DNA of 64,000 nt, from positions 124,001-188,000 of IMG/VR virus record IMGVR_UViG_3300032214_000715. One strand, written 5' to 3'. The position numbers and the translations under genes were made by a program. This document shows positions 1 to 43,308 of this stretch, one piece after another. The notes beneath the pieces were generated by a model that had not been told where the DNA came from, ran no database searches, and worked only from the letters and a program-made list of their open reading frames with translations. Within the stretch, counting starts at the first letter, position 1. Every line of letters starts with the position of its first letter.

Positions 1-60
1 ACGATCTTGCCTTTTATAACACTCAAAAGAATTTGAGTCAAACCACGATTCATCAATCAT
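1..60 (-). CDS. 5' part of a hypothetical protein running off the window (MIDESWFDSNSFECYKRQDR...)
   Basis: ATG at 58-60 (minus strand), preceded by AAGGAG at the end of the upstream gene; frame stays open to the window edge. Confidence 0.6.
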   Translation of the reverse strand, partial: MIDESWFDSNSFECYKRQDR

Positions 61-66
61 TTTACT

Positions 67-432
67 TTACTCCTTAACAAATAATTTAAGATTGGGTGGA
101 GTCCAACCTTCGGGCTTTAATACTTTGCCGTCATCACGCTTACGAACTTTTCCGGTGACGCTATCAATCTTGGCAAAGTTTGTACGCATTACTTCATTCC
201 ACGCACCATCTCCGTCTGCTCCAAGACTGTGAATAGCACCAGCAGTTACCACCATGATATCAATCAGTGCGTCTAAACACTCAACGCGATCACCGGCAGA
301 ATTTGCTTCCCACAATTCATCTACTTCTTCAGCAATCAACTTTGTATAAAGATTGAATTGACTCTCATTAAACGTGCCCACTGATTGGTCACACGCCGAC
401 ATAAATTTTTCTTGGTCTTTAAATACACTCAT
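67..432 (-). CDS. MazG-like / PRA-PH family all-alpha NTP pyrophosphohydrolase
   Basis: EEVDEL...DALIDIMVV acidic motif, EVMRTN, and C-terminal RxDGKVLKPEGW typical of this family. Confidence 0.8.
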   Translation of the reverse strand: MSVFKDQEKFMSACDQSVGTFNESQFNLYTKLIAEEVDELWEANSAGDRVECLDALIDIMVVTAGAIHSLGADGDGAWNEVMRTNFAKIDSVTGKVRKRDDGKVLKPEGWTPPNLKLFVKE

Positions 433-466
433 TTGGGTTCTTTCTTTGACTTAGTGTAGTACACTA

Positions 467-1648
467 TTAATTCGCTCGCAAGATGATTAGGTCATCATTG
501 GTCCGACCCTTAACTTGTGCCTGCACTGCGTTGATTTCCTTGAACAGCTTACGAGCAGCCGGCTTACCTACACCAAGCAACTTCTTAAGTTGGTCCCCAG
601 GCTTCCGAAGTGTCTTCATTCCACTTTGAGTAGAATCAAAGCCCACAATCGTAGTGCCCTTAACAGACAGAGTTCCAACATGCGAGTCGGCAATGTAGTA
701 GTGAAGCTTACGCTTGGCACTATCGTATGCCCACACTTCAGTGGCACCAACAATCTTGCTAGGATGAATGCTAACCAAATCAATCTTGGCAGCGTCATCC
801 TTAAATTGGCGCATGTACTTGATTTTGGAAACTTGCTTCTCAACGGGGACAGGCTTACGCTTGCGAACCGTTTTGGTTTGCTTCTTTACGCTTACATAGG
901 ATCCAACTGCGGCCAACACCGAATCGCAAAACTTAATCATATTGCGAATGGCAATTTTTCCGTACTGAGCATGGCCTTCCTTAAGATCGGCGTCACTGCC
1001 CTGTTGTACTTCTTCCAGTTCAGCGCGACGACGCTTCCACACTTCAACAATAATGCTGGTGTGTTGAGGAAGAATGTTGCGCTCGGAAAGAATACCAACC
1101 ACGTTTACATCGGCGGGTTGAGGTTCGCCATTCAACAGATATGAGTCAAAAAGACCCTCAATGTCGCCAGCAGCTTCACGTGCCTTGTCGCGCATAATCT
1201 CCTGAACGTTTGGGCGAGTAGAAATCTTTTCTACTTCAGGCTCAACTTCTTCTTGCTTAGCGGTTTTAGTCAACAGAGCCTTGAGATGATCGCCGATGCG
1301 AGCCAATTCTTGTTCGGTTAGAACAAGACCGCGCATTCCCATACGAGCAATCCATCCAAGAGAAATGTTATATTCACGCTCGTGTACACCGCGCAGACGC
1401 TTGATATCAGCAGCAGTGACTCCGCGATGAGCAGCAAATTCCAGAATCAATTCTTTGCTCATCTTACGATCAAAAAAGCGAGAGTACCAGTTCAGTGATT
1501 GAACCAGAATTCCCTTGCGAGACTCAGTGTCAGGCTGCTCAAAAAATACTGGTTCGGAACCAGCAAACTTTGTATCAGCGTCACGAGGATTCAATTCGGG
1601 TGCGATAACAACGTCACCGACCACTGTATTGCGAGATTTGCGAGCCAT
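467..1648 (-). CDS. Hypothetical early protein resembling a conserved T4-superfamily protein of unknown function
   Basis: 393-aa ORF directly downstream of a sigma70-consensus promoter; C-terminal LVSIHPSKIVGATEVWAYD segment. Confidence 0.7.
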   Translation of the reverse strand: MARKSRNTVVGDVVIAPELNPRDADTKFAGSEPVFFEQPDTESRKGILVQSLNWYSRFFDRKMSKELILEFAAHRGVTAADIKRLRGVHEREYNISLGWIARMGMRGLVLTEQELARIGDHLKALLTKTAKQEEVEPEVEKISTRPNVQEIMRDKAREAAGDIEGLFDSYLLNGEPQPADVNVVGILSERNILPQHTSIIVEVWKRRRAELEEVQQGSDADLKEGHAQYGKIAIRNMIKFCDSVLAAVGSYVSVKKQTKTVRKRKPVPVEKQVSKIKYMRQFKDDAAKIDLVSIHPSKIVGATEVWAYDSAKRKLHYYIADSHVGTLSVKGTTIVGFDSTQSGMKTLRKPGDQLKKLLGVGKPAARKLFKEINAVQAQVKGRTNDDLIILRAN

Positions 1649-7104: not shown

Positions 7105-7401
7105 CTATGCCCATTTTAAGTTAAAGTAAATTAAATCACTTTCTTTTATTTTGGCAGTGATTATAAAGTGTCTAAGACACAACTCATAGTCTATATGTGA
7201 ATGACATTCTGGAACTTCGCAACAGTGACTAATTATCCACCTACCCTTTTCACTGTCTTTCCATTCTAAAAACGGTTTCCAATCAAATATATTTGCTGGA
7301 ATATTGTCGTACTCCATAGCGTCAATATTAAATGAATGTACGATTAGATTATGAATGACAATCGGAATGCCATCAATCATTTTTACAAAATGCTGACTCA
7401 T
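7105..7401 (-). CDS. Hypothetical protein
   Basis: 98-aa ORF, ATGA-coupled to the endonuclease gene. Confidence 0.65.
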   Translation of the reverse strand: MSQHFVKMIDGIPIVIHNLIVHSFNIDAMEYDNIPANIFDWKPFLEWKDSEKGRWIISHCCEVPECHSHIDYELCLRHFIITAKIKESDLIYFNLKWA

Positions 7402-23263: not shown

Positions 23264-26200
23264 TCAATTGCTGCTTTGTATTGATGGGCCGCTCGCGTCA
23301 GGGAAAGAACGTCCAGATCCAGAAATAACTCTAACTGCTCCCCAAGCACCTCCGCCCCCAGCATTATAATTTTTAATTCCGTTTCCAACTACTATTGGTA
23401 TTATTTGCCCGGGTGTAACCACAATGTTATTTTTCCACCCCAGACCACCACCGCCACCGCCTGCTGCTGGAGTACTGGCAAAATACCCTCCTGCGCCACC
23501 GCCAAACAGTCCGCCAAAACTATTTGTCCAGTACTGAGTTCCAAAGCTTCCTCCCCAGCTTCCGTACCCATTTTGAGTAAATGGTGAGCTACCGCCACCA
23601 CCTCCACCGCCCCCATCAGCGACAGCATTTCCGCTAGTAGAACCTATTCCGTATATGCCAACTCCCAATCCACCTAAAGGCGTCGTGATAATCGGATTTA
23701 AGCCTACACCTCCGTTCCCGCGATATCCGGCCGCACCACCACCGCTGCCGCCTCTCAAAACCGTTAAAACAGTATAAGTATCTCCTCCGTTTCCTCCATT
23801 GGCGCCGCCAGTTCCAACATAAGAACCTCCAACTGTTCCGTTTGCTCCGTATCCAATCACCTCAGTAGTTCCAAAAGTGCTATCGCCTGCTTTAACAGCC
23901 AGCCCTCTGCCTGATCCTGCGCCAACGCAAACAACACTAACATTGTATACACCATCTGGTACTACATAGTAATACGTACCTGGTTTATCAAATACTGTAT
24001 CTGTAATCTTACTCTTGTATCTGATAATTACTGTGCCCGATCCACCTAGTCCCCCGCCTCCTCCACCACCGCCTCCAGTGTTAGCTTGCCCATTGGTGGC
24101 CGCAACTGCTGGAACAGTATTTCTGTGTCCATTACCACCGCCTCCTATTCCGCCGAGTCCATTAAGTCCCACGGTGGCACTATAGCCATTGTCTGACGAC
24201 ACTCCACCTCCTCCGCCACCTCCATAGTACTTATTGGTAAATGAAACTAACCGTCCTAATCCACCGTCTCCAGCAGAACAGCTTAGTGTGTTGCCACCCA
24301 CAGCTCCAGCTCCACCGCCGCCGGCTCCTCTATGAACATAGCACGCGCTCCAGGGAGTAGCTGTGCCTCCACTATTTCCCTGCGTGGAGAACCCCGCTCC
24401 AGGACTAGTAGCACCATATCCTATACCAGTTGGCATATAGTATCCAACTGCTCCTCCTCCAGACGCGCCGCTCAGACCCGAGGTAGCACTGTTATAAGCT
24501 AGCCAATTTCCACCACTTCCTCCGCCATAAGCTTCAAATGTTGGGCTAGTCAGCACTTTTGATACTGGTCCCACTGTAGTTATAGTAGCGTTTGTGATAC
24601 TTCCATCTAAGAATGGATCCGGAGTGGCTGAACCAAATGGTCCTACTGTGACCACTGTTGGGTTGCTTACTTTAGTGATAGTTAAGTTATTATTGCTACC
24701 GTCAACTATCTGTTCTGCGTTGGCAGTTAGTAGCGTTGTATTTGCTATAGCAGTCAATGAACTAGTAGGGGCTATACTATCAATGTATAGTGCTCTTCCC
24801 TTGACTACTCTAAAATTACTTATATAACCTTTTAGTAAGTATGAAGTGCTATAGTACCCACCGATGGCAACACCTGTACAGCTATAATTTGTAGTATCAA
24901 TTCTACTTGCGGCCGGAACGCCATTTATATAAACTGTGGTTCTACCACTTCTGCGAATCAGAGCAAAATGTGTCCAAACGTTAATCACTGCTGTTGCTCC
25001 AGTGTTGGCGGCCGTACCCGCCCAGTACACGCTATACGGAGCCCCAGCCACGTTGTCTACGTACAATCCAATAGTATTACTAGCAGAAGCATTTAATCCA
25101 ATTGAATTTCCACTTAGTTGAAATATTCCGCGATTCTCAGTAGTAGTTAAGTATACCCATCCTTCAACAGTAAAATCTCCGGTGCCAAAGTTGAACGCAG
25201 TTGAATTACTAGTGCTCAGATAATCTCCGGTGCCATCAAAGAACACACTACGAGATTGAGTAGTAACAGCAGTTGATGTAAATGGACTAGAAAGAATTGG
25301 TCTAACATCAGCACGAGCGGTAAAACTGAGATTATTTGTACTGTTATCAACAAACAAAGCGCCCTGACAAGTTAATAGCGTAGTATTAACTGTAGCAGAC
25401 AGTGGAGTGGTGCTTGGCGTAAAGTTAGCGGTATAAACAGCGGTACTCTTTACTACGCGAAGATTAGAAAGATATCCACGAAATAAGTACGAGGTACTAT
25501 AATACCCGCCAATAGCTATATTTGTAGCAGTAATATCTTCGGCGGCCACTCTACTATCAACTGATGTCCCGTTTATATAAAGAGTAGCAGTACCGGAAAC
25601 ACGAGCAATCGCTACGTGATTCCAAGTATTAGCGGTCATGACCGCGATGGTGGGGCCCACCCAAGTGCCAGCAACATTAACTATTAACGACCCAGTAAGA
25701 TTACTTAACGTTCTGCTCAAGCCCTGTATTACAGTAATTCCAGTTCCATAGGAGGTCATTAATCCGCCGTTCGTAGTAGAAGTTTGTAGTATGCCTCGTT
25801 GCGTGGCTGAGCTAACATCAGCGCTATTTACCCAAAATTCTACAGTAAAATCTCCTGTACCGAAATTAAAAGCAGTATTACTTCCAGTACTCATATAGTC
25901 GCCGGCACCGTCAAAGTAAGTGCTCCAACGTTGAGTTTCGGTTCCATATGGAGTATTAACATCAACCGTGGCACTTCCATTTACTGTTAATGCTAGATTA
26001 TTTGTGCTACTATCAATTATAGATGTACCAGAACACGTTAACAGCGTAGTGTTTTCTATTGTGGTCAGTGCGCTTATGGGTGGAATGAAATTGGCGGAGT
26101 TAGCGCTATATAGTGCGGTTCCTTTTACTATTCTTATATTAGACATATATCCGTTGAATAGCCACACAAGAGTATCGGGATTAAGTCCTATAACTAGATG

Positions 26201-29200
26201 GCCCTGTGAAGTTATCGTTGATAGTTGATTACAAGTAACTTCCCCTAATATTCCATTTAAGAACATTCTAATTGTTGATCCGTCGCCCACTACAGCAAAG
26301 TGATTCCACGTATTAGGTAATATAGTAGTGTTTGAGTATGCTTGTCCTCCTCCAGTTTGATAGTAAGATATATATCCTGAGCTTAGTACTACACGCCAAC
26401 CTCCTCCGGCAACAGATTGAAAATTTCCTAAAATTCCCTGAACCGTACTTACATTAGGAGCATTTATCCAGCCCTCTACTGTGAATGGAGTGCTTCCGAA
26501 TTCGTGCGCTGGACCCTTTGGTATACTTAAATAACTTGAACCGTTAAAAAGAATACTGTAGTTTACTGGCTGCGGTATCGCAGTTAATTCCTGTGCGGTT
26601 AACAACACCGTGTTGTTTATTGTTGATAATCTCCCACCCGACGGTACAAAGTTTGCTGTATATAGAGCAGTTCCTTTTATTATTCTTAGACTTGAAATTA
26701 GTCCACTAAATGAAGTAGTACTTCCATTTATACCCTGTCCTATTAATACCGGCTTAGTAGTTCCCAGATCGCTAGCACTAGTGTGTGTGCCAGTTGCTTC
26801 AATTCCATTTAGAAATATTCTCCATACTCCTGATTGGCGAGTTAATGCCACGTGATTCCATACATTTGTCGTAAAGGCAGTTGAGCCATACACTAAATTA
26901 GCTGGACCGTTATAGTACTGTAGTGCTCCTCCGGTTGATAAAAATATAGCAGTTGATTCTGCCCCTACTGCTGCTCTTAAGTCTATGAACGTTCCGCCAT
27001 TCACAGCAGAAGTCGGCAATTTACCGTCCCATTTCGCCCAAAATTCAATAGTAAAGTCACCAGTTCCGAATCCAAAAGCACTATTAGTCGGAACACTTAA
27101 GTAACTATTGGATCCAACAAAAGATGCCCCGTAATATGGAGATAAATGTATGATTGAAGCTTTACCGTTTTCTCCAACTAGACCTCCGGCGCCTACATTA
27201 ATTATTTTTGTACCCGGAGTAACAGTTGTGGATCCAGTTATCACGCCTCCACCTCCACCTCCACCGCCAGCAACTCCAGATCCACCTCCACCTCCTCCTC
27301 CAACTATTACATAGTCAACATCTACCGTGGATGTAGTCTCAACATTAAAAGGAGAGAATTGAACTGGCAGTGGATTAGAATTAATTGTTATAGAAAACTT
27401 ATTAGAGCTAACATCTACTGGATACCCATTTTGACAAGTCAATAATGCTGTATTTGTTATAGCAGTTAATGGTGAGCTTGATGGTGTGAAATTACTTGTA
27501 TATACAGCAGTACCTTTTACTATTCTGAGATTACTTATATATCCATTTAAGAAAAAAGAAACGCCTCCGTTGGCAATAAATCTTCCAACATGTAGCGATG
27601 TAGAATTTACAGCAGTATAATTTGTATTATTTGATTGTGTTGTGCCTATCTGTGTACCATTAACAAATGCTCTTAAACTTGTTCCGCCGCGTGTCAAGCA
27701 AACATGATACCACTGATTGAGAGATGGATTCCATGAAAATGTTAGTCCAGCATAAGTCGGCGTGTATCTAGCAAAAACCAGTTGATTAGCACCGCCGTCA
27801 AAATAAAGAGACCATGCACAAAGTCGTTGAGTTGGTGTAGCATCCACGCCATCACCTAACATTGCAAACACAGGATAGCCAGTTTTTGTATTTAAATATA
27901 CCCAACACTCAATAGTAAAATCACCTGTATCAAAACTAAACGCAGCATTAGTTGGTATGGTTAAATAATCTCCATTACCATTAAAGTAAGTACTCCAATT
28001 TCTATAAAACGCAGCACTTGAAGTGGGAGAAAATACATCTGAACGAACAGTGTTATATGCCTGAACTATTGCGTTAGTAACGCTATTATCTACGGGTCTC
28101 CAAGGAGTTTGAAGAGTAAGTAATATCGTATTATTAATGGGTTGTAATCTAGTAGTGGGCGGAGTAAAGTTACTCACATATAAAGCAGTTCCCTTTAGTA
28201 TACGAACATCACTTATATACCCTACAAAATTACCAACTCCACTACTAGCCCATAATTTTTGTCCTATTCTTAATATTGAACCGGGTACTGTAAAAGTAGT
28301 GGTACCTGTAATGCCAGTGGTGTTATTAGAGCTAACTCCATTTACGTAAATTCTAATTTCATTGCCCGATCTAACTGCCGCTATGTGATTCCAGCAACTT
28401 AGATTAATTCGTTCGCTACTGGTTAATATAGTAGCGCCCCAACGATTTAAAGTAATTGTTCTATTAGAATTAGTATTTAATACATATCCGTTTGAGTTAC
28501 CAGTACGAGTATCAATTAAAATCATGCCCGACGATGGACTAGCATCAGTGTACATCCACAATTCAATAGTAAAATCGTTGGCTTCTAAATTAAACGTATA
28601 ATTTGAAACTGAGCCGGAAACTACGTCAACATACCCACTACTAAAAAAATAACTACTGCCATTATTAGTAGTGGTATTAATAAATGGACTAAGAACTGTA
28701 GCAGTTACTCCGCTGCTAGATTTATTAATAGTTAAATTATTTCCACTATTATCAATAAATGTTTGCTCTCCAGCAGAACCCTGACAAGTTAATATAGAAG
28801 TAATCGGATTCTCGGAACGTTCTCCAGTATGTGGGTATATAATATAGGGAGCATAAGTCAGTGACTGTCCCATAGGCGTAAAAGACGATGCCGTCGGTAA
28901 CACATTACCGTTTTTTACTACTCTTAAATTTGATATATGTCCGTCAAAAAATCCAGTAGCAGTAGAGTTTCCTCCAATAACAAATTTTGTACTATTAGTA
29001 GTACTAATAGCAGTATTACTAGACGCTATTAATTGTCCGCCCATATATAATCTAGTCGTGGGAGCGGTATATGTTAATGCCACGTGAACCCAAATATCAG
29101 CCGATAATTTTACTGTTGAGGTAATAGTAGTGTAATTACCATTTCCGGTATGTAATTTAGCGGTTAATAATCCGTTTAATAAGTATAGTGAGTATTGAGT

Positions 29201-29488
29201 TCTTCCGTCGCTACCGCCTAGATATGAGCATATTATTTTTTCATTTACACTGGAAATTCCCGTGCTACTGGGTCTTATCCAGCATTCAATTGTATAACTT
29301 ACTCCGCTAAGATTTAAATTAGTATCAGCAGTGTTTACCCATAATTCGCCGCCGGCGTCAAATTTCACGCTATTAAAATTTTGCGGTATTACTAATTCTG
29401 TAGTGCCAACAGTGTTAATTACATCGCCGACGAAAAACTCAGTTTCGGATACGTAATTTCCACTGGATGCCATTAATATTCCACTCAT
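23264..29488 (-). CDS. Giant adhesin with 7 LamG/concanavalin-like domains and Gly-rich domains
   Basis: Repeated FxGxxxYL...DFTIExW...WxH.A..R...GYISNLR..KG.A.Y..NFTP units; polyglycine tracts. Confidence 0.85.
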   Translation of the reverse strand: MSGILMASSGNYVSETEFFVGDVINTVGTTELVIPQNFNSVKFDAGGELWVNTADTNLNLSGVSYTIECWIRPSSTGISSVNEKIICSYLGGSDGRTQYSLYLLNGLLTAKLHTGNGNYTTITSTVKLSADIWVHVALTYTAPTTRLYMGGQLIASSNTAISTTNSTKFVIGGNSTATGFFDGHISNLRVVKNGNVLPTASSFTPMGQSLTYAPYIIYPHTGERSENPITSILTCQGSAGEQTFIDNSGNNLTINKSSSGVTATVLSPFINTTTNNGSSYFFSSGYVDVVSGSVSNYTFNLEANDFTIELWMYTDASPSSGMILIDTRTGNSNGYVLNTNSNRTITLNRWGATILTSSERINLSCWNHIAAVRSGNEIRIYVNGVSSNNTTGITGTTTFTVPGSILRIGQKLWASSGVGNFVGYISDVRILKGTALYVSNFTPPTTRLQPINNTILLTLQTPWRPVDNSVTNAIVQAYNTVRSDVFSPTSSAAFYRNWSTYFNGNGDYLTIPTNAAFSFDTGDFTIECWVYLNTKTGYPVFAMLGDGVDATPTQRLCAWSLYFDGGANQLVFARYTPTYAGLTFSWNPSLNQWYHVCLTRGGTSLRAFVNGTQIGTTQSNNTNYTAVNSTSLHVGRFIANGGVSFFLNGYISNLRIVKGTAVYTSNFTPSSSPLTAITNTALLTCQNGYPVDVSSNKFSITINSNPLPVQFSPFNVETTSTVDVDYVIVGGGGGGGSGVAGGGGGGGGVITGSTTVTPGTKIINVGAGGLVGENGKASIIHLSPYYGASFVGSNSYLSVPTNSAFGFGTGDFTIEFWAKWDGKLPTSAVNGGTFIDLRAAVGAESTAIFLSTGGALQYYNGPANLVYGSTAFTTNVWNHVALTRQSGVWRIFLNGIEATGTHTSASDLGTTKPVLIGQGINGSTTSFSGLISSLRIIKGTALYTANFVPSGGRLSTINNTVLLTAQELTAIPQPVNYSILFNGSSYLSIPKGPAHEFGSTPFTVEGWINAPNVSTVQGILGNFQSVAGGGWRVVLSSGYISYYQTGGGQAYSNTTILPNTWNHFAVVGDGSTIRMFLNGILGEVTCNQLSTITSQGHLVIGLNPDTLVWLFNGYMSNIRIVKGTALYSANSANFIPPISALTTIENTTLLTCSGTSIIDSSTNNLALTVNGSATVDVNTPYGTETQRWSTYFDGAGDYMSTGSNTAFNFGTGDFTVEFWVNSADVSSATQRGILQTSTTNGGLMTSYGTGITVIQGLSRTLSNLTGSLIVNVAGTWVGPTIAVMTANTWNHVAIARVSGTATLYINGTSVDSRVAAEDITATNIAIGGYYSTSYLFRGYLSNLRVVKSTAVYTANFTPSTTPLSATVNTTLLTCQGALFVDNSTNNLSFTARADVRPILSSPFTSTAVTTQSRSVFFDGTGDYLSTSNSTAFNFGTGDFTVEGWVYLTTTENRGIFQLSGNSIGLNASASNTIGLYVDNVAGAPYSVYWAGTAANTGATAVINVWTHFALIRRSGRTTVYINGVPAASRIDTTNYSCTGVAIGGYYSTSYLLKGYISNFRVVKGRALYIDSIAPTSSLTAIANTTLLTANAEQIVDGSNNNLTITKVSNPTVVTVGPFGSATPDPFLDGSITNATITTVGPVSKVLTSPTFEAYGGGSGGNWLAYNSATSGLSGASGGGAVGYYMPTGIGYGATSPGAGFSTQGNSGGTATPWSACYVHRGAGGGGAGAVGGNTLSCSAGDGGLGRLVSFTNKYYGGGGGGGVSSDNGYSATVGLNGLGGIGGGGNGHRNTVPAVAATNGQANTGGGGGGGGGLGGSGTVIIRYKSKITDTVFDKPGTYYYVVPDGVYNVSVVCVGAGSGRGLAVKAGDSTFGTTEVIGYGANGTVGGSYVGTGGANGGNGGDTYTVLTVLRGGSGGGAAGYRGNGGVGLNPIITTPLGGLGVGIYGIGSTSGNAVADGGGGGGGGSSPFTQNGYGSWGGSFGTQYWTNSFGGLFGGGAGGYFASTPAAGGGGGGLGWKNNIVVTPGQIIPIVVGNGIKNYNAGGGGAWGAVRVISGSGRSFPDASGPSIQSSN

Positions 29489-29497
29489 AATTTATTC

Positions 29498-31978
29498 CTA
29501 TATTTCTTTATTTCCAGAAGTAATTCGTACAAATCCACTCTTATTATTTGACGCTCCGACTACTATATTTAATTGTTGTCCTGGTTTAACCGTCATATTA
29601 TGCTTAGTAATTATTTCATCAGTTCTTGCGTAAACATAATCCTCAACACTAGTTGCTCCATTGGATAATACAAATCTATCTGGAGCACCCCTACATTCAA
29701 TATCTATAAAAAATACTCCATCGGGTACAACATACTTAAAATTTCCAGATTGATTGTAAATAGACTCGGTGATATTACTAATATATTTAACTGCTATCAC
29801 GTGATTATCATCTGATGATGCTAAGCACTTTATTGAATTTTTTGTTGCGTCGGCAATAGCGTCAGAGCCTACTGCTATATTATATGTGCCAGCTAAAAGC
29901 TTTAAATTTTTAGCTAATAACGAATTTTGATAGGTAGTGCTGTTTTGTAAAGCTACACTGTAATTATAATTACTAGTATTTTCTAATCTTAATATGTCAA
30001 CAGCGGTAGTTATTGAAAATGGAGATTTGTCGCTGTTCTGAGCGTTAACAATTTGTAAATTAGCGTTTTTAGAACTATTATTTTCAGTCACTGAATATTG
30101 AGCTATTAATAAACTAGTATTTAAAATTGGAGTCAAATGAGTGATTGGGCATTTAAAAACTGTGATGTTCCTTGCTACTCCGCGAGTAATTCTAACATCC
30201 TGTAAATACCCATTCCAATTTTTACCTATAATCAGTGATTCGCAATTACTGTAATTGGTATTATCTACACAGTATCTTGCCCATTTATTATTTCCAAATT
30301 GTCTTATTGATTGTTGTACTCCATTAATATAGCAAGTGAGTATTTTATTGCGTCTTTGAATGCTTATAAAATTCCAAGATTTGAACCAAGATTCAGAACG
30401 AACTAAATCAGTTAAATACACACTGGTATTTGAACCGTCGTTAATTACTATTCCGAATTGATTCCCGAATTCAGAATTATTAAGTCTTATCTCCAACGTT
30501 TTATTGTTTTGATAATGTGCGGTAAAAACACTGCGAGTTTTCAAGTCATTAATCGCTAAATATGCCCAGCACTCAATAGTATAATCTTCTGTACCAAAAT
30601 CAAATATAGATGAATTGAATGGATAAGTTATTGACGCAGATGTAATATTTCTAGTTATCTTGTTTTTTAAATCACTATTATCAACAAACAAATTAGGATG
30701 CTGAGCGGTTAATAATACAGTGTTAATAGTTTTTGGTAAAGGTTTGTCTAATGGAGTAAAATTTGAAGTGTATATAGCACTGTCTTTTATAACTCTTACA
30801 TTTGATACTTTTCCATTGAGTGCGTATAATATATTGCCCGCGGAATCTGAACCCAATTTACCAATGTGTTTTATGTAATTAATATCGTTATTAACAATTG
30901 ACCCATTAATTACGCCGTCAACAAATATGCGAATTGTGCCCGATGATCTAGTAACCGCTAAATGATACCATCTATCACTAACTATAACAGTGTTGCTAGA
31001 TAAACTAAGTCCATTACTGTAGTAGTGTAGCTCTCCTCCGACTATTGATATTAGTTGTTGATTAATGTTGTTGTGTAAATACCCTATAACACAGCAATTT
31101 GAATTTACATTTGATATATTTACCCAACACTCTACAGTGTAATCATTACTTAATTCAATTAAATCAAAGTCAATAGACGTATTTCCAAAGAAATTAGCAC
31201 TAGTGTTCTTTTTATTGTCAATTATTTTTAATTCAGAATTGTCGTTAAAGCTGGCACTACTATCGAAGAATTTATATTCAGCGCTGTATGAGCCGGTATT
31301 AGTATTCAGTACAGTATTAGCATATGGACTGATATCTACAAAATTAGCATCGTGCTCAGTTAAACTTAAATGTAACACAGTGTTATCATAATATGAATCT
31401 GATTCATTTGAAAACAAATTCTGTGGTATATCGTAATTGGGCGTGTAATATACGGCTGAATCAGTGATCAATCTTAAGTTACTTATATACCCACTAAAAC
31501 TGACGGGTTTATTACCGCTCACACGAATATTACACTGTGCTAGCTTAATAGTTTCTAAATAAACTAAATTCCCGACATCTACACCATCTACATATAGAGT
31601 TAATATATTATCGCAACGCTCTACTACAATGTGATGCCAGCTATTATTAGTAAATGACTCGTTCTGCTGAATTATCTCTTTAGTATTACTATCTTGTAAT
31701 CTTACTGCTAGTTTATTAAAATCTTTTACTTTATAAATTGTGAATTCGTTATTCGCAGAACTGATTATTTCATAACTGTCGACAGTTGATACGGTTGAAT
31801 ATACCCAGAATTCAAAAGTAAAATCGTTAGTTAGATTTTTTTCTAGTTCAGAAACTTCAATATATGAGTACTCATTCAAATATACACTATTTGTTCGTGA
31901 GGGTACAGTAAACTTATATAAAGTTGGAGTAGAGTATACTATACCGTCAAATTGATTATCAGTGATATTTGATTCCAT
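29498..31978 (-). CDS. Divergent LamG-domain protein (3 domains), AT- and Asn-rich paralogue of the neighbouring adhesin
   Basis: FTFEFW / YTVECW / YTIECW, WHH, GYISNLR motifs; late promoter at 31986-31992. Confidence 0.75.
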   Translation of the reverse strand: MESNITDNQFDGIVYSTPTLYKFTVPSRTNSVYLNEYSYIEVSELEKNLTNDFTFEFWVYSTVSTVDSYEIISSANNEFTIYKVKDFNKLAVRLQDSNTKEIIQQNESFTNNSWHHIVVERCDNILTLYVDGVDVGNLVYLETIKLAQCNIRVSGNKPVSFSGYISNLRLITDSAVYYTPNYDIPQNLFSNESDSYYDNTVLHLSLTEHDANFVDISPYANTVLNTNTGSYSAEYKFFDSSASFNDNSELKIIDNKKNTSANFFGNTSIDFDLIELSNDYTVECWVNISNVNSNCCVIGYLHNNINQQLISIVGGELHYYSNGLSLSSNTVIVSDRWYHLAVTRSSGTIRIFVDGVINGSIVNNDINYIKHIGKLGSDSAGNILYALNGKVSNVRVIKDSAIYTSNFTPLDKPLPKTINTVLLTAQHPNLFVDNSDLKNKITRNITSASITYPFNSSIFDFGTEDYTIECWAYLAINDLKTRSVFTAHYQNNKTLEIRLNNSEFGNQFGIVINDGSNTSVYLTDLVRSESWFKSWNFISIQRRNKILTCYINGVQQSIRQFGNNKWARYCVDNTNYSNCESLIIGKNWNGYLQDVRITRGVARNITVFKCPITHLTPILNTSLLIAQYSVTENNSSKNANLQIVNAQNSDKSPFSITTAVDILRLENTSNYNYSVALQNSTTYQNSLLAKNLKLLAGTYNIAVGSDAIADATKNSIKCLASSDDNHVIAVKYISNITESIYNQSGNFKYVVPDGVFFIDIECRGAPDRFVLSNGATSVEDYVYARTDEIITKHNMTVKPGQQLNIVVGASNNKSGFVRITSGNKEI

Positions 31979-38031: not shown

Positions 38032-41000
38032 CTATGTTGGAGTAAAGTTAGCTGTGTACTTTGCGTAGCTATTAATTTGTAAATTGTCTAAATATCCACT
38101 GTACAAGTATGCCGAGCTATAGTAACCACCTATTGCTATGTTGGTAGCAGTTATACTTCCACTAGCGACTCTACTATCAACTGATGTTCCATTGATGTAC
38201 AGCGTGGCAGTACCGGAAACACGAGCAATCGCTACGTGAGTCCAAGTATTGGTTGTTACTACTGCTGAATTGGACCCAACGTTCACTCCCGCTACAATTA
38301 CAATTAATCCCCCGGTTAGTGCCCCGAAAGCACGATTAGAACCTTGAAGTATTGTTACTCCAGTTGTGTATCCAGTAGACAGTCCACCAGCGGTTGTAGA
38401 AGTTTGTAGCTGCCCGCGCTGCGACGCTCCGCTTACATCAGCGCTGTAAATCCAGAACTCAACAGTAAAGTCACCAGTACCCCAAGCAAGATTTGGATTC
38501 ACTGCTGTTAAGTAGTCTCCAGTGCCATCAAAGTACATAGAAGAGTTACCATTCTTTTTCTGTACGGTACTTAATGCTGAGTCACCGATAGTTTCAAAAA
38601 TATTATCACCGATACCATCATATATACCAGCATTTCTAAAGTTCAGCGTTAATGCTGAGCTTGCCAGTGTAGTAGTTGGCGTGGTTGGAGGAGCGAAGCT
38701 GTTACTGTACAATCCAGCGCCGCGAAGAATGCGAAGATTTGAGATATATCCATTAAGTGGATTAACTCCTCCGGGTCCTGCTCCGACAAGCATCGGATAC
38801 AGCACACTTCTGTACATTCCAGCAGTGCTACTTGCGATAGTGGTGGTAAGAACTCCGTTAGAGAACAATCTCAAACTACCAGCTCTTCTGGATATAGCAA
38901 TATGATACCAAACGTTTGGTTTTACGTTGGAAGCTATGATAGCGGCATTGGCAATATCCCACGCAGCATTGGCAGAAGATGCGTAAAGTACTAATCTGCT
39001 GTTAGTATTATCAAAATATACAACAAAAGCACCATATGTTATAGTTCCCCATCCAGAAGAAAGAACTGCCATGACAGAAGCAATAGAGGTTGGTCTCCAC
39101 CAGAAATCAATAGTAAAGTCTTCGTTTGCTACTGGTATAAAAGCATCGTTAGCCGGAACACTCAAGAAGTCACCAGTTCCATCAAAATAAGCAGTTCCAC
39201 CCAACAATGCTCCAGCAGTTGTTGTATTGGTAACACTTACTGTATTACTGAATGGAGTAAATGGATCAACTCTAGTGTCGCCGAATCTAGTAATATTCAG
39301 AGAATTACCACTAATATCATCCATAGTATTACTTTGGGCTACTAATAATCCAGTATTAGGTGTAGTTATTAATGGAGCGGTGCTGGGAGTAAAAGCGCTG
39401 TTATATAGTGACACACCCTTTAGTATTCTAGCATTTGATATCCATCCTTTGTACAACACAGTTGATGTAGCGGGAACTGCTCCCGCGCTTGTGAAATATG
39501 TGCCAAATGTAGTGTTTATTGACAAATAAGCCTTGGTAGTTGAAGAGGTTGCTGTAGCCACAGATACACCGTTTAACCACATTGTTAGCGCACTACCATT
39601 TCTAGTTACAGCAACATGATTCCAAGTGCCCATGTTCACGGCACTTGATGATGTTAATGTCGCAGTAAGACCGGGCGTTGCTCCTGCATGGAAAAATGTT
39701 ACTGTATTGTTAGATTCTAATCTTAGAATCCAACCTTCGCTGCCACTGGCCTGATTCCATTGAGCCATTAATGGTCTTATGCCAGAGGCAACTTCACTGT
39801 TAAACCAGCATTCTACAGTAAAGTTTCCACTCAATATATTAATAGCACTACTATGATTAACTGCTACATAGTCTCCGGTGCCATCAAAGTACCAAGAATA
39901 TAACCCATCAAATGGATCAAAGGAGTTGTTTATTGCTGGAGAACCAGATGTAGTTATAGCATATGCGTTACTACTATTGTCAATAAATCTGTTTGATTGA
40001 CATGTCAACAATGTTGTTCCTGAGATGGCAGTCAATGGTGATGTTGGCGGTGTAAAACTTGATCTATATACAGCGGTTCCTGTTACTATTCGTAAATTTG
40101 AAATATAACCATTAAAGTAACTTTGAAATCCGGTATACTGGGAAGAACCTATATTTGTTGTTCTTGCTGTTACGGTCTTAGTTATTGAAGTGACTGCTCC
40201 AGGAATACCATTGGTGTATATTATTACATTACCCGAATTACGAACCACCGCAACGTGAGTCCATGAATTTAGATTAACTGTACTTAACGTATTTGCGAAT
40301 GCCTGACTTGCGGTGTCACGTATTTGTACTTCTATTGTTCTATCAGTTTGTAAAGACACTGCCCAGTAATTATTGTCAGTATTGCCGGTGGCAGTAGATG
40401 CTATCATTTGAGTCGCCGCTACTGTTGTAGGATAAATCCAGCATTCAATAGTAAAATCACCAGTTCCAAATGTTGAGGCACCTGAAGGAGCAACCAAGTA
40501 AGCATTACTACTTAAAAACACACTATAATTACTAGCGTATGGACTTAATGGTAGTCCATTGTTGTTAGTGTGTATTGACGCATTGCTATTAGTCACAACT
40601 AAATTATTGCTACTGCTATCATTGAAATTATTTTCTCCTAAAATTAATAAACCAGTGTTAGAAATGTTAGTTAAATCAGTAGTTGGTGGTGTAAAATTGC
40701 TTGTGTATACAGCAGTACCTTTTACCACACGCACATTTAAAATATGCCCAATGAAAGGATAAAGTGAACCAGAATCTCTACCAACTCTGAAAATACTTGA
40801 TGGGTAATTTGCAGATGATGTTAATGTACTTCCAACTTGAGTTCCATTTACGAAAAATCTAATACTAGTTCCTGAACGAGTGACCGCCAAATGGTACCAT
40901 TGATTGATGGTAATAGTGTTTGAATTTATAAAATTGCCAGCAGTGCCCGTATACCAAAATTGAAAATTAGTTCCATATTGATACAATCTAAACGGTTGTT

Positions 41001-43308
41001 CAGCAGCATAATTATCTATACCAAATATCATTCTGTAAGATACAGTAGCACTTGTTGGATATGCCCAGCACTCGTATGTAAAATCACCTGTTAATGGGGC
41101 TAGAGAATCAGATGCTGGTACAGATAAAAACGAATTAGTGCCATTAAAACTCATGCTACCAGTCGTTAAGAACGGGCCAAACATGGTTGTCTTGGCATCT
41201 GCGGATACAGTTATTGAAGCATTATTAATACTATTGTCAATAAATCTAGAACTCTGACATGTCAATAAAGATGTTCCTGATATTGCGGTTAACGCGGATG
41301 TTGGAGGTGTGAAATTACTGGTGTACACTGCTGTACCTTTTACCACGCGAAGATTAGAAATATAACCATTAGTATAGGCACTAGTTGAGAAGTTTTGCCC
41401 GCCAATATACACGGTTGCTGATGGATTTAAAGCTACAGTAAGTACGGCACTGTAACCTTGAACACCATTTACAAATATTTTCAGCGTACCAGAGATTCTA
41501 ACAACTGCAATATGATTCCACTGATTATTCGTAATTGCAATTGACGATGCGTAAATTGTTCCATCGTAAAAATAAGGAAAGTTGCTCGCGTCAACATAAA
41601 ATGCATAAGGGGATGCTGAAGCAGCCCCTCTTGCATCTATTATAGGATTATTTCCGGCTGCTGGTTTATTTATCCAGCATTCAATAGTGAAATCTCCAGT
41701 ACCAAACTGAAATGCAGCATTTGTCGGCGTTGTTAAATAATCCCCATTACCGTCAAAGTATCCGCTCCAACTTTGTGTTACTGGTGTGATAGTTGTGGTT
41801 GTAGAAGTTAAACTGAAGGGACTATTTGCGGTGACTCTAGCATCACCAACTGTAGTTATTGTAAATGCGTTTGTACTGCTATCTGTCATCGCTGCGCCCT
41901 GACAGGTCAACAAACTAGTGTTTGAAATAGCAGTTAATTCAGATGTTGATGGCGTAAATGCTGAAGTATAAACGGCAGTTCCTTTTACTAAACGGAGATT
42001 ACTGATATATCCAGTATATGTCGCACCCCCATCATCAGCACCTATTCTAACCGCCGCTTGAGCAAAACTATAACTATTAGTTGCGGTGGCTACTTGTACT
42101 CCATTATAAAATAATCTCAGTGAATTTCCACTTCTTACTGCTGCTATATGAGTCCAAACATTTAACGTAGGCAACACATTGTATGCGATTTGATTATCAA
42201 CTCCATAAGCACGAATAACAAAGTCCGAATTTACTTTACCAACAAATAATCCTCCAGTGGCAGTGGTGGCATATACCGCGTGTACATTGTTACTCCAACT
42301 TGTTGGATATATCCAAGCCTCCCATGTGAAGTCGCCGGTTCCCATAGAAAATGCCGCATTACTTGACAAAGATAGATAATCTCCGTTGCCGTCAAAGAAC
42401 ACACTACGTGCTGGTAATTTAGTTATTTCAGTTGTTGTCGGAACGTCAAATGGTCCATAATGTCTAGATTGAGCGTCACCGTTAATTGTTAGCGCGAAAC
42501 TATTAGGACTGTTATCTACGAGATATGTATTCTGACAAGTCAATAATGACGTTCCTGATATTGCGGTTAGTACGGATGTAGATGGAGTGAAGTTACTGGT
42601 GTATAATGCGGTACCTTTTACCATTCTTAGATTAGAAAGATACGCATTTAATTTAGAATATGTGGCCGTTTGATTGGCTCCAGACGAAAAGTTACCAATA
42701 CATGTTTGAATATTAGCACCTGCCCAGGGAGCATTTGCTGAAGAGGCTACCGCATTTCCGTTTAAGTATAAAGTAACAGTAGTAGTTGCTGAATTATAAA
42801 CTACTGCCAAATGAGACCACGTGTTTAACTGTAAAAGCGCAGAGCTTGTAAGTACTATCGCATTTGCTCTGTTTGAAGTAGTAAAGTAAACAAAATTTGG
42901 AGCCCCAGTTGAAGAAATTCTAAGCGCAAAGTTCTGGGAATTACTTCCACCATCGTCTTGAACTAAAATATAGTTATAACTGTTGACATCAAATGATACT
43001 GGATTTATCCAAGTTTCTATGGTAAAACTTCCACCAAATACATTTAATACTGTATTGGCAGGGATTGTTAAATAATCACCAGTACCGTCAAAAAACCAAC
43101 TACAATTAGTTGAATAGGGATTCAATGTTCCTTGTGTGACGTTTCCATTAGCAGTTATAGGGCCAAAGTAGTTGTTAGACTCATCAAGAAATACGTTGTT
43201 TTTTTCTCGGTTATATCCTTCGCCGGATAATTTCATTATGAGATACTTTGACAATGTACTAATTGCCGCTGATACCTTTGACGCTGACATGCTAAAAAAT
43301 CCGAACAT
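38032..43308 (-). CDS. Adhesin with 8 tandem LamG/concanavalin-like domains
   Basis: Eight units of FDGxGDYL...FTxExW...GYISNLR type; late promoter at 43330-43336. Confidence 0.85.
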   Translation of the reverse strand: MFGFFSMSASKVSAAISTLSKYLIMKLSGEGYNREKNNVFLDESNNYFGPITANGNVTQGTLNPYSTNCSWFFDGTGDYLTIPANTVLNVFGGSFTIETWINPVSFDVNSYNYILVQDDGGSNSQNFALRISSTGAPNFVYFTTSNRANAIVLTSSALLQLNTWSHLAVVYNSATTTVTLYLNGNAVASSANAPWAGANIQTCIGNFSSGANQTATYSKLNAYLSNLRMVKGTALYTSNFTPSTSVLTAISGTSLLTCQNTYLVDNSPNSFALTINGDAQSRHYGPFDVPTTTEITKLPARSVFFDGNGDYLSLSSNAAFSMGTGDFTWEAWIYPTSWSNNVHAVYATTATGGLFVGKVNSDFVIRAYGVDNQIAYNVLPTLNVWTHIAAVRSGNSLRLFYNGVQVATATNSYSFAQAAVRIGADDGGATYTGYISNLRLVKGTAVYTSAFTPSTSELTAISNTSLLTCQGAAMTDSSTNAFTITTVGDARVTANSPFSLTSTTTTITPVTQSWSGYFDGNGDYLTTPTNAAFQFGTGDFTIECWINKPAAGNNPIIDARGAASASPYAFYVDASNFPYFYDGTIYASSIAITNNQWNHIAVVRISGTLKIFVNGVQGYSAVLTVALNPSATVYIGGQNFSTSAYTNGYISNLRVVKGTAVYTSNFTPPTSALTAISGTSLLTCQSSRFIDNSINNASITVSADAKTTMFGPFLTTGSMSFNGTNSFLSVPASDSLAPLTGDFTYECWAYPTSATVSYRMIFGIDNYAAEQPFRLYQYGTNFQFWYTGTAGNFINSNTITINQWYHLAVTRSGTSIRFFVNGTQVGSTLTSSANYPSSIFRVGRDSGSLYPFIGHILNVRVVKGTAVYTSNFTPPTTDLTNISNTGLLILGENNFNDSSSNNLVVTNSNASIHTNNNGLPLSPYASNYSVFLSSNAYLVAPSGASTFGTGDFTIECWIYPTTVAATQMIASTATGNTDNNYWAVSLQTDRTIEVQIRDTASQAFANTLSTVNLNSWTHVAVVRNSGNVIIYTNGIPGAVTSITKTVTARTTNIGSSQYTGFQSYFNGYISNLRIVTGTAVYRSSFTPPTSPLTAISGTTLLTCQSNRFIDNSSNAYAITTSGSPAINNSFDPFDGLYSWYFDGTGDYVAVNHSSAINILSGNFTVECWFNSEVASGIRPLMAQWNQASGSEGWILRLESNNTVTFFHAGATPGLTATLTSSSAVNMGTWNHVAVTRNGSALTMWLNGVSVATATSSTTKAYLSINTTFGTYFTSAGAVPATSTVLYKGWISNARILKGVSLYNSAFTPSTAPLITTPNTGLLVAQSNTMDDISGNSLNITRFGDTRVDPFTPFSNTVSVTNTTTAGALLGGTAYFDGTGDFLSVPANDAFIPVANEDFTIDFWWRPTSIASVMAVLSSGWGTITYGAFVVYFDNTNSRLVLYASSANAAWDIANAAIIASNVKPNVWYHIAISRRAGSLRLFSNGVLTTTIASSTAGMYRSVLYPMLVGAGPGGVNPLNGYISNLRILRGAGLYSNSFAPPTTPTTTLASSALTLNFRNAGIYDGIGDNIFETIGDSALSTVQKKNGNSSMYFDGTGDYLTAVNPNLAWGTGDFTVEFWIYSADVSGASQRGQLQTSTTAGGLSTGYTTGVTILQGSNRAFGALTGGLIVIVAGVNVGSNSAVVTTNTWTHVAIARVSGTATLYINGTSVDSRVASGSITATNIAIGGYYSSAYLYSGYLDNLQINSYAKYTANFTPT

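What the first reader, a model, noticed from the sequence alone, without database searches (positions are those of the whole stretch)
24520..27325. Nested domain insertion: three LamG domains inside a LamG domain, inside a Gly-rich domain
Seen in sequence: in the 2074-aa adhesin the Gly-rich domain starts at VDYVIVGGGGGGG...VGAGG...NGKAS (~27150-27320), breaks off, and resumes ~2.6 kb later at TFEAYGGGSGG (~24520-24545). The first LamG in the gap stops at LLTAQ without its usual F.D.S.N..IT..G....SP tail. That tail (PFLDGSITNATITTVGPVSKVLTSP) appears only after three more complete LamG units. The 826-aa neighbour also appears to have one LamG inserted in another, between SASFNDNSELKI and IFDFGTEDYTIECW. 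Inference: lectin-like modules are inserted into loops rather than just appended, giving a branched adhesin.
Basis: partly seen in the sequence, partly recalled or inferred. Interest (0 to 1): 0.62.

Follow-up and report, generated by a model that had tools for sequence, protein, structure and literature searches.

The report
Lectin domains nested inside phage adhesin
A giant tail protein of an uncultured jumbo phage is built like a Russian doll, with three lectin-like modules spliced into a fourth that is itself spliced into a glycine-rich domain; related phage proteins repeat this up to four levels deep, which suggests how such adhesins gain binding modules without breaking existing folds.

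Summary
In the 2074-aa protein (window 23264-29488, minus strand), Pfam Gly_rich_2 matches aa 722-777 (profile 15-75) and aa 1606-1825 (profile 55-226). Joining the halves in silico gives one full-length match to my own profile (133 bits, against 43 and 88). LamG A stops after LLTAQ. Its terminal beta-hairpin lies 660 residues downstream (aa 1625-1649), after three complete LamG units. Positional orthologues carry one, two or four LamG units at this site, and the one-unit form has LLTAQ directly followed by the hairpin. AlphaFold2 models and fold comparison show that LLTxQ plus hairpin are the last strands of the preceding jelly roll. A split-chain prediction docks the distal hairpin onto LamG A (ipSAE 0.76; best control 0.02). 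However, the monomer model left that hairpin undocked, and the glycine-rich fold could not be modelled. The second claim, a LamG inside a LamG in the 826-aa neighbour, has only weak support. About 20 of 119 metagenomic homologues show runs of n LamG bodies followed by n connectors (n = 2-4). A model of one such run folds as one domain nested inside another. This is a new variant of known domain insertion, of moderate to high interest.

The parts
23264..29488 (-). Gene for the 2074-aa protein P0001. Order of parts: 3 LamG units, Gly-rich N half, LamG A, LamG B-C-D, distal hairpin, Gly-rich C half, second Gly-rich domain.
   Evidence: ORF list, translation, Pfam, own body and connector profiles
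27341..29371 (-). N-terminal array of three LamG units (aa 40-716), each a body followed by its connector
27149..27331 (-). Gly-rich domain, N half (aa 720-780; profile columns 4-65), ending ...GENGKASII
   Evidence: Pfam PF21722 positions 15-75, 36 bits; own profile
26588..27142 (-). LamG A body plus FTP..LLTAQ (aa 783-967). This is the outer LamG; it lacks its terminal hairpin at this position.
   Evidence: body profile columns 3-166 and connector columns 1-21 only; AF2 pLDDT 70-95
25940..26560 (-). LamG B body plus complete connector (aa 977-1183), first inner unit
   Evidence: 4dqa aligns to model 191..401, Z 20.6
25271..25927 (-). LamG C body plus complete connector (aa 1188-1406), second inner unit; absent from orthologue P0045
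24629..25252 (-). LamG D body plus complete connector (aa 1413-1620), third inner unit; absent from orthologue P0045
   Evidence: The connector has pLDDT 90-94 with no LamG after it. Whole pentraxin 3flp_A aligns to model 626..838.
24542..24616 (-). Displaced terminal beta-hairpin of LamG A (aa 1625-1649, PFLDGSITNATITTVGPVSKVLTSP)
   Evidence: connector profile columns 24-48; contiguous with LLTAQ in orthologue P0123; docks on LamG A in the split-chain prediction, ipSAE 0.76 vs 0.02; 76% identical to P0045; NOT docked in the monomer model
23996..24541 (-). Gly-rich domain, C half (aa 1650-1831; profile columns 69-236), TFEAYGGGSGG...GSGTVIIRYKS
23267..23995 (-). Second, uninterrupted glycine-rich domain (aa 1832-2074). 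No Pfam hit, but it resembles viral Gly_rich_2 clusters.
   Evidence: Pfam blank; ESM Atlas feature score 0.95 to clusters carrying PF21722
29498..31978 (-). Gene for the 826-aa neighbour P0002: three LamG units and a glycine-depleted remnant of the Gly-rich domains
31223..31258 (-). P0002 aa 241-252 (SASFNDNSELKI), candidate displaced first strand of the third LamG
   Evidence: Rejoining extends the body-profile match from column 13 to column 2, for +3.5 bits only. The same arrangement occurs in orthologue P0124.
30629..31222 (-). P0002 second LamG body plus connector (aa 253-450), candidate inserted unit
30014..30628 (-). P0002 third LamG from its second strand onward, plus connector (aa 451-655)
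   Evidence: body profile columns 13-158
38032..43308 (-). Comparator in the same operon: the 1758-aa protein P0003, a plain tandem array of 8 LamG units. It starts with an orphan LLTxQ-like strand and hairpin, and its last body ends at FTPT* without a connector.

Best explanation
P0001 is a virion tail (fibre or baseplate) adhesion protein of an uncultured contractile-tailed jumbo phage. It is built from LamG/pentraxin-type jelly-roll modules and two glycine-rich domains. The self-contained LamG module here is [body + FTP..LLTxQ strand + beta-hairpin]. The hairpin packs against the first strands of the body, so the chain enters and leaves the module at almost the same point. That geometry lets a whole module, or a tandem run of modules, be spliced into a turn of another domain without breaking the host fold. 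In P0001 this happened twice. LamG A sits in the beta-turn between profile columns 66 and 67 of the first Gly-rich domain (...GKASII | ... | TFEAYGGG...). A run of three modules (B, C, D) sits inside LamG A, between its LLTAQ strand and its terminal hairpin. The architecture is therefore Gly[ A[ B C D ] ]. The number of inner modules changes by unequal recombination in the conserved repeat motifs, and orthologues have 1, 2 or 4 modules. Shown: the complementary profile halves, the orthologue series, the tail assignment in the models, and the predicted docking. Inferred: that the halves assemble in the real protein, that the modules bind host-surface glycans, and that nesting gives a compact branched display of binding modules near the glycine-rich tip.
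For: The Gly-rich split is supported by Pfam halves 15-75 and 55-226, both above cut-off. My own profile gives 4-65 plus 69-236, and 133.0 bits when rejoined against 43.1 and 88.3 apart. The LamG A split is supported by connector columns 1-21 at aa 947-967 and 24-48 at aa 1626-1650. Rejoining raises the unit score from 140.8 to 160.9 bits and the connector score from 17.7 to 40.1 bits. Three proteins form a series at this site. P0123 reads GlyN-LamG A-ILTAQ..FADFSNLQATITTVGNVTKLSTS-GlyC, with no inner insert. P0045 has A plus B. P0001 has A plus B, C and D, and the indel boundary lies inside the IRIVKG|TA.YT motif. P0045 is a positional orthologue: the gene order around P0124/P0045 mirrors that around P0002/P0001. 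P0123 shares the same N-terminal architecture, but its genomic context was not examined. Independent Gly_rich_2 proteins (P0166 twice, P0183) carry one LamG [body+LLTxQ+hairpin] at the same loop, with no N-terminal hairpin. In the AF2 model of aa 783-1652 (mean pLDDT 83.7), LamG D's connector is confident (90-94) with nothing after it. Whole pentraxin and LamG chains align over body plus following connector, for example 3flp_A residues 1-217 to model 626..838, Z 19.1. In the split-chain prediction of LamG A with the distal hairpin, ipSAE is 0.76 (runs 0.76, 0.80, 0.60) and the best of 3 controls is 0.02. The calibration mark was reached by 58 of 80 solved complexes and 2 of 110 mismatched pairs. 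Runs agree in at least 76% of contacts and partner pLDDT is at least 62. Contacts fall on aa 784-800 and 960-965 of LamG A. A homologue with 'B B c c' order (P0031 aa 580-1024) folds with pTM 0.78. A 205-aa pentraxin (6ype_A) aligns 187 residues (rmsd 3.0, Z 17.8) across model 1..440, which is the outer body plus the distal connector. The inner unit is 189..403. Genomic context: tail sheath, tail-fibre and baseplate-like PHROG families flank the gene.
Against: The AF2 monomer model of aa 783-1652 left the distal hairpin unplaced (pLDDT below 50), although the alignment had no rows covering it. The hairpin alone matches the connector profile weakly (8.4 bits, i-E 0.033). The split-chain pass cannot separate this hairpin from any LamG hairpin, because close cousins of a true partner also pass, and my own alignments were used, so the calibration holds only roughly. 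The nested-topology readout for the homologue rests on one of 50 listed rows. LamG A's body is only 32% identical between P0001 and P0045, while the hairpin is 76% identical. The hairpin may therefore be constrained by the Gly-rich domain rather than by LamG A. No model of the Gly-rich domain, split or whole, could be made, so assembly of its halves rests on sequence profiles and comparison. No binding, expression or virion data were obtained.
Confidence: 0.78

Rival explanations
1. This is linear beads on a string with no nesting. The LLTxQ+hairpin element would be the N-terminal head of the following LamG, as the canonical LLLHFDG...D.S.N..IT..G motif suggests. LamG A and B would then simply lack heads, and the two hairpins after LamG D would be leftovers or linkers.
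For: Canonical arrays, including P0003 in this window, start with such a hairpin and end with a body that has none. Among the homologues, 117 of 119 end in a connector-less body and 74 start with an orphan hairpin. The monomer model did not dock the distal hairpin.
Against: LamG D's connector is confident with no LamG after it, and whole pentraxin chains align to body plus the following connector. Single LamG units inserted in Gly-rich domains have the connector only at their C-terminus. Runs of n bodies followed by n connectors cannot be read as head-body units without circular permutation. The P0031 model gives an outer domain made of the first body and the last connector.
Confidence: 0.07
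2. The Gly-rich halves are remnants of a domain broken by recombination. They would persist as linkers or independent small elements and would not reassemble.
For: No structural model of the assembled domain was obtained. The neighbour P0002 shows that a Gly-rich domain in this gene family can decay: its N half has lost its glycines and most of the rest is deleted.
Against: The halves are exactly complementary, with no missing or duplicated profile columns. They are the best-conserved parts between P0001 and P0045 (72% and 62%, against 32% for LamG A). The same break point is used in P0123 and P0045, and independently in P0166 (twice) and P0183. All glycine motifs are retained.
Confidence: 0.08
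3. The distal hairpin (aa 1625-1649) belongs to the Gly-rich domain or to an interface with it, not to LamG A. In that case only a single-level insertion exists: four tandem LamG units inside the Gly-rich domain, the first with a truncated C-terminus.
For: The hairpin is 76% conserved between P0001 and P0045 while the LamG A body is only 32% conserved. The Pfam and own-profile envelopes of the C half begin upstream of TFEAYGGG, at aa 1606-1611, although with low posterior confidence. The monomer model did not dock the hairpin.
Against: Uninterrupted Gly-rich domains have no such segment, and columns 66 and 67 are adjacent in them. The segment fits the LamG hairpin consensus and aligns with 110 canonical hairpins. 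In P0123, P0166 and P0183 it directly follows LLTxQ of the inserted LamG. It docks on LamG A's first strands and on the LLTAQ strand at ipSAE 0.76 against 0.02.
Confidence: 0.1
4. The arrangement is an assembly or gene-calling artefact, such as a chimeric contig or a collapsed repeat.
For: The gene is repetitive and comes from a metagenomic virus record estimated to be 68% complete.
Against: It is one uninterrupted 6.2-kb frame. An identical gene is present on a second IMG/VR record. The same architecture is present in an independent read-archive assembly at 56% identity with conserved gene order. The repeats are only 67-81% identical at the DNA level, too diverged to collapse.
Confidence: 0.02

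Closest known systems
'Evolved' Dit and Tal proteins of siphophages infecting lactic acid bacteria, which have carbohydrate-binding modules inserted into loops of baseplate proteins (PMC7533335, PMC7291167, PMC10688798)
   Same: These are phage adhesion-device proteins in which lectin-like modules are inserted into a loop of a host domain rather than appended. The presumed role is extra saccharide binding.
   Different: The host domains differ (Dit galectin-like or Tal, against a Gly-rich domain and a LamG). Those insertions are single-level. Here the insert is itself the host of a further tandem insert, and homologues go four levels deep. The phage here is a jumbo myovirus from a metagenome.
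Laminin-G / pentraxin jelly-roll domains (Pfam Laminin_G_3 PF13385; e.g. PDB 3flp, 4dqa, 7zl1, 6ype)
   Same: The fold matches, with Z 17-22, rmsd 2.4-3.0 A and 180-200 aligned residues per unit. Pfam scores reach E 1e-116. The N- and C-termini are adjacent.
   Different: Pfam's PF13385 model ends before the LLTxQ strand and hairpin. Here those last strands can be separated from the body by up to about 660 residues (P0001) or by whole nested units.
Glycine-rich receptor-binding tips of phage fibres: Pam3 gp24 TNF-like plus glycine-rich domain, S16 gp38 (PDB 6F45), and the ALK extracellular TG domain (PDB 7LIR) (PMC9608196)
   Same: Beta-strands alternate with GGGGxGG-type motifs, about a dozen glycine-rich motifs are present, the domain sits at the distal end of phage tail proteins, and the first and last motifs are the most conserved.
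   Different: No sequence-level match to any solved structure was found, even with a profile. No model could be made, so the fold relationship is untested. None of the described proteins carries a domain inserted in the strand-to-strand turn.
Discontinuous LamG-like domains in solved multidomain proteins (PAPP-A, dimethylformamidase, N-acetyl-beta-phenylalanine acylase)
   Same: In the fold search, these chains align to one LamG unit over chain ranges such as 13..764 or 75..580 with about 200 aligned residues. This suggests that a jelly roll completed by a distant segment has precedents.
   Different: I inferred this from alignment ranges only and did not inspect those structures. They are not phage proteins and are not tandem or recursive.

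Membership tests
Laminin_G_3 (PF13385), concanavalin-like lectin/glucanase superfamily | Profile match above the curated cut-off | tested here: met
   P0001 scores 386.4 bits with 7 stretches against a 27.6-bit cut-off. P0002 scores 135.6 bits with 3 stretches.
Laminin_G_3 (PF13385), concanavalin-like lectin/glucanase superfamily | Two-sheet jelly-roll fold superposable on solved LamG or pentraxin domains | tested here: met
   The AF2 model has mean pLDDT 83.7. Z is 17-22 and rmsd 2.4-3.0 A against pentraxins, neurexin and laminin LG domains, and 4dqa.
Laminin_G_3 (PF13385), concanavalin-like lectin/glucanase superfamily | Carbohydrate or other ligand binding | not testable with these tools
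Gly_rich_2 (PF21722) | Profile match above the curated cut-off over the whole profile | tested here: met
   There are two stretches, 15-75 (36.0 bits) and 55-226 (33.2 bits), each above 24.3 bits and together covering the profile. The rejoined sequence matches my own profile at columns 4-236 with 133 bits.
Gly_rich_2 (PF21722) | The two halves fold as a single domain | not tested
Mixed alignments could not be built properly with MAFFT.
TNF-like plus polyglycine-lattice receptor-binding domain (Pam3 gp24 / S16 gp38 / ALK type) | Sequence or structural similarity to the solved members | tested here: not met
   Neither the single sequence nor the profile gave a PDB hit at E up to 1. Structural similarity was not testable. 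The resemblance rests on motif pattern only (PMC9608196).
Domain insertion (discontinuous host domain with a continuous guest) | Host halves are complementary, without loss or duplication, and relatives exist with an uninterrupted host | tested here: met
   The Gly-rich halves cover columns 4-65 and 69-236. Uninterrupted relatives include P0124, P0005, P0035 and 261 uninterrupted domain hits across the fetched proteins. For LamG A, the connector halves cover 1-21 and 24-48, and the un-nested form is P0123.
Domain insertion (discontinuous host domain with a continuous guest) | Host segments are in contact in three dimensions | tested here: inconclusive
   The split-chain prediction passes (0.76 against 0.02), and homologue P0031 models as nested. 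However, the monomer model of P0001 did not dock the hairpin, and the Gly-rich halves were not modelled.

The most novel reading that the evidence does not exclude
LamG modules in this phage protein family may follow a recursive 'splice-in' grammar. Any [body+connector] unit can host further units between its body and its closing strands, giving domains nested up to four deep (BBBBcccc). Plain arrays may work the same way: nearly all start with an orphan LLTxQ+hairpin and end with a LamG that lacks exactly that element. The first hairpin might therefore close the last LamG, either within the chain (the whole array nested in a circularly permuted outer LamG, forming a closed loop) or between chains. 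The between-chain case would be donor-strand complementation, as in chaperone-usher pili, linking tail proteins head to tail.
Probability: 0.2. Interest if true: 0.85.

Novelty: new variant of a known kind. Interest (0 to 1): 0.62.

Why it matters
Phage host range depends on how tail proteins gain and reshuffle binding modules. Loop insertion of single carbohydrate-binding modules is known in siphophage baseplates. This case shows a modular rule that allows repeated and nested insertion of lectin-like units, and it occurs in many uncultured phages. It would explain how very large adhesins grow without misfolding. It gives domain annotators a concrete reason why linear domain calls mis-describe these proteins. 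It also offers a natural template for engineering multivalent binders in which guest domains are displayed from a rigid host. In addition, it flags the LamG 'connector' (LLTxQ strand plus hairpin) as part of the fold that current Pfam boundaries omit.

Tried and rejected
1. Mean-field DCA on 450 extended LamG units, to ask whether the hairpin co-varies with the preceding or the following body. Gap artefacts dominated and the effective number of sequences was about 400. I abandoned it.

2. Four attempts to build one alignment mixing Gly-only, LamG-only and bridging rows, for a model of the whole aa 670-1835 region or of P0123 aa 733-1200. MAFFT aligned unrelated fragments to each other (A3, A6, A7, A8). 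None was used.

I did not send those rows to any other remote tool. The Gly-rich fold therefore remains unmodelled.

4. AF2 monomer model of aa 783-1652. The distal hairpin was not docked (pLDDT below 50). I report this as no support, not as evidence against.

5. Searches for closer relatives. IMG/VR returned only a 100% identical record. One metagenome scan found none. A word search on the C-terminal region found 5 relatives. tblastn of the Gly-rich part against cultured phages found nothing, and megablast of the window found nothing.

6. PDB sequence and profile searches for the Gly-rich domain found no hit. For a LamG unit the only hit was 4qvs, covering the body alone.

7. Recent gene conversion between LamG C and the last LamG of P0003. 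DNA identity is only 80.6% over 160 nt, so it is not recent.

8. I considered the 'head' model, in which the hairpin belongs to the following LamG, and rejected it (see rival explanations).

9. The large representative-protein search, the reads tools and alternative genetic codes were not needed and were not used.

Full report
WHERE THE WINDOW LIES. The window is bases 124001-188000 of a single 239,163-bp virus record, which CheckV estimates to be 68% complete. Most of it (14.7-63.8 kb) is one minus-strand run of very large genes. PHROG families in and around the run are tail sheath, tail fibre, baseplate wedge and virion structural proteins. The phage is therefore an uncultured contractile-tailed jumbo phage. 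The closest cultured matches are LamG-rich structural proteins of cyanomyoviruses, at 25-34% identity. Nothing similar was found at the DNA level.

THE OBSERVATION. Pfam finds seven Laminin_G_3 stretches and two Gly_rich_2 stretches in P0001. Scanned separately, aa 722-777 match Gly_rich_2 positions 15-75 and aa 1606-1825 match positions 55-226. Each exceeds the curated cut-off.

THE GLY-RICH DOMAIN IS SPLIT BY AN INSERTION. I built a profile from uninterrupted domains found here; 261 uninterrupted domain hits were detected.
- The N half of P0001 matches columns 4-65 and the C half matches columns 69-236.
- After cutting out aa 781-1649 in silico, the rejoined sequence gives one match over columns 4-236 at 133.0 bits. 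That is the sum of the parts, 43.1 and 88.3 bits.
- The break lies in the turn between the '..nssf' strand and the 'ltaiGGG' strand.
- The same turn holds a single LamG in unrelated Gly_rich_2 proteins: P0166 (twice in one protein) and P0183.

THE LAMG UNIT AND ITS CONNECTOR. I made separate profiles for the LamG body (166 columns, from the YFDG strand to FTP) and for the connector (51 columns, FTP..LLTxQ..hairpin..SPF).
- P0001 then reads: B c B c B c, Gly N half, B c[1-21], B c B c B c, c[24-48], Gly C half. LamG A's connector is thus cut into complementary halves at aa 947-967 and aa 1626-1650, around three complete units.
- Rejoining raises the unit score from 140.8 to 160.9 bits and the connector score from 17.7 to 40.1 bits.
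- The distal hairpin alone is a weak hit (8.4 bits, i-E 0.033).

ORTHOLOGUES. Word searches found two relatives with the same N-terminal architecture.
- P0123 has the Gly N half, one LamG, then 'ILTAQ DSLSSGA FADFSNLQATITTVGNVTKLSTS', then the Gly C half. This is the un-nested form. Its genomic context was not examined.
- P0045 has LamG A and B.
- P0001 has A, B, C and D.
- The P0001/P0045 indel boundary lies inside the repeated IRIVKG|TA.YT motif. This fits unequal recombination between repeats.
- The P0045 contig has the same gene order as the window. P0124, the orthologue of P0002, lies upstream, and a gene of about 2000 aa with the same faint Pfam hits lies downstream.
- P0124 carries an uninterrupted Gly-rich domain.

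IS THE HAIRPIN A TAIL OR A HEAD? Plain arrays such as P0003 in this window begin with a hairpin and end with a body that has none. Three results favour the tail reading.
- LamG units inserted singly in Gly-rich domains carry LLTxQ plus hairpin at their C-terminus and nothing at their N-terminus.
- In the AF2 model of aa 783-1652 (92-row alignment, mean pLDDT 83.7), LamG D's connector has pLDDT 90-94 although no LamG follows it.
- Whole solved pentraxin and LamG chains superpose on body plus following connector. Examples are 3flp_A residues 1-217 on model 626..838 (Z 19.1), 4dqa on 191..401 (Z 20.6) and 7zl1_A on 403..617 (Z 19.7).

DOES THE DISTAL HAIRPIN CLOSE LAMG A? In the monomer model it does not: aa 1628-1652 have pLDDT below 50. 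The alignment had no rows covering that segment. I then ran a split-chain prediction of LamG A body plus LLTAQ (aa 783-968) with the hairpin (aa 1618-1652), each with an alignment of about 110 rows.
- ipSAE was 0.76 (runs 0.76, 0.80, 0.60) and the best of three controls was 0.02.
- The calibration mark was reached by 58 of 80 solved complexes and 2 of 110 mismatched pairs. The counts hold only roughly, because my own alignments were used.
- The runs agree in at least 76% of contacts, and partner pLDDT is at least 62.
- The hairpin touches the first strands of LamG A (aa 788-790 and 796-799) and the LLTAQ strand (aa 960-965). The chain therefore enters and leaves LamG A side by side, which insertion into a beta-turn requires.
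- The test supports compatibility, not specificity. Other LamG hairpins might dock equally well.

A WIDER PATTERN. I applied the two profiles to 119 metagenomic homologues. Runs of n bodies followed by n connectors appear as follows: 17 with n = 2, 4 with n = 3 and 4 with n = 4, for example P0080 aa 1342-2210. Many apparent 'BB' pairs followed by a single connector are divergent connectors that the profile missed.
- I folded one n = 2 case, P0031 aa 580-1024, using 17 rows of the same architecture.
- Mean pLDDT was 82.3. pTM was 0.78, against 0.45 for the beads-on-a-string P0001 segment. The distal connector was confident (78-85).
- In the fold search, the inner unit is model 189..403. One 205-aa pentraxin (6ype_A) aligns 187 residues (rmsd 3.0 A, Z 17.8) across model 1..440, which is the first body plus the last connector.
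- That is a nested topology, although it rests on one listed row.

THE 826-AA NEIGHBOUR. In P0002 the third LamG body starts at profile column 13, and a strand fitting columns 2-12 (SASFNDNSELKI) lies upstream of the second LamG. Rejoining extends coverage but adds only 3.5 bits, or 2.2 bits in P0124. The arrangement is conserved in the orthologue. I rate it plausible but weakly supported.

WHAT IT IS LIKE. Loop insertion of carbohydrate-binding modules is known in the 'evolved' Dit and Tal proteins of siphophages (PMC7533335, PMC7291167, PMC10688798). Glycine-rich receptor-binding tips are known from Pam3 gp24, S16 gp38 and ALK (PMC9608196). I found no sequence link from Gly_rich_2 to these structures and could not model the domain. 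Literature searches for nested or recursive LamG insertion in phage proteins returned nothing relevant, though the library is incomplete.

VERDICT.
- Gly-rich domain split: about 0.9.
- Nesting in LamG A: about 0.75.
- LamG-in-LamG in P0002: about 0.5.
Function as a branched adhesin is inferred from context. The phenomenon is a new variant of domain insertion, and its recursion across a large family of uncultured phage proteins is the most interesting part.

Noticed in passing
window 38032-43308 (P0003) and 119 homologues P0003-P0122: Plain LamG arrays almost always end with a body that lacks its LLTxQ+hairpin (117 of 119). Most start with an orphan LLTxQ-like strand plus hairpin (74 of 119 detected). 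The numbers of bodies and hairpins therefore match but are offset by one. The first hairpin might complete the last LamG within the chain (ring closure) or between chains (donor-strand complementation). P0001, P0002 and their orthologues do not end in a bare body and have no profile-detectable leading hairpin.
   Followed up: partly
window 29498-30020 (P0002 aa 655-826); GC 0.31-0.35 over 28-32 kb: P0002 keeps the strand-like parts of the Gly-rich domains of its orthologue P0124 but has lost the glycines. For example, VDILRLENTSNYNYS aligns with IDYLVVGGGGGGGSG. About 165 residues of the first domain and most of the second domain's glycine loops are missing. The gene lies in the most AT-rich part of the window.
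   Followed up: partly
window 26588-27142 (LamG A) versus 24542-24616 (its hairpin): Between P0001 and orthologue P0045, the LamG A body is by far the most diverged segment (32% identity). Its displaced hairpin (76%) and the Gly-rich halves (72% and 62%) are the most conserved. LamG A may be the specificity-determining module, or the hairpin may be constrained by contact with the Gly-rich domain.
   Followed up: partly
homologues P0080 aa 1342-2210, P0023, P0028, P0054, P0075: Three or four LamG bodies are joined by a conserved short linker (..FT.PT.PLAVTQSSSANTAAL..PTNG.) and followed by the same number of LLTxQ+hairpin elements in tandem. This implies nesting three to four levels deep.
   Followed up: partly
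homologue P0239 aa 419-1248: A Gly_rich_2 domain is interrupted at a different place (profile columns about 158/163) by a 609-residue insert in which the body profile detects one LamG. The Gly-rich scaffold therefore tolerates insertion at more than one turn.
   Followed up: no
window 23267-23995 (P0001 aa 1832-2074): A second glycine-rich domain (TDTVFDKPGTYYYVVPDGV...GAVRVISG) has no Pfam hit, but its closest ESM Atlas clusters are viral and carry Gly_rich_2. Pfam's model probably misses a subfamily.
   Followed up: partly
window 7398-8225 and 11261-12547: GIY-YIG-type and HNH-type homing endonuclease genes lie next to a thymidylate synthase gene (8222-9121), upstream of the structural operon.
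   Followed up: no
fold-search rows for PAPP-A, dimethylformamidase and N-acetyl-beta-phenylalanine acylase: Several solved proteins align to a single LamG unit over very wide chain ranges (for example 13..764) with only about 200 aligned residues. This hints that LamG-like domains completed by a distant strand also occur in solved non-phage proteins.
   Followed up: no
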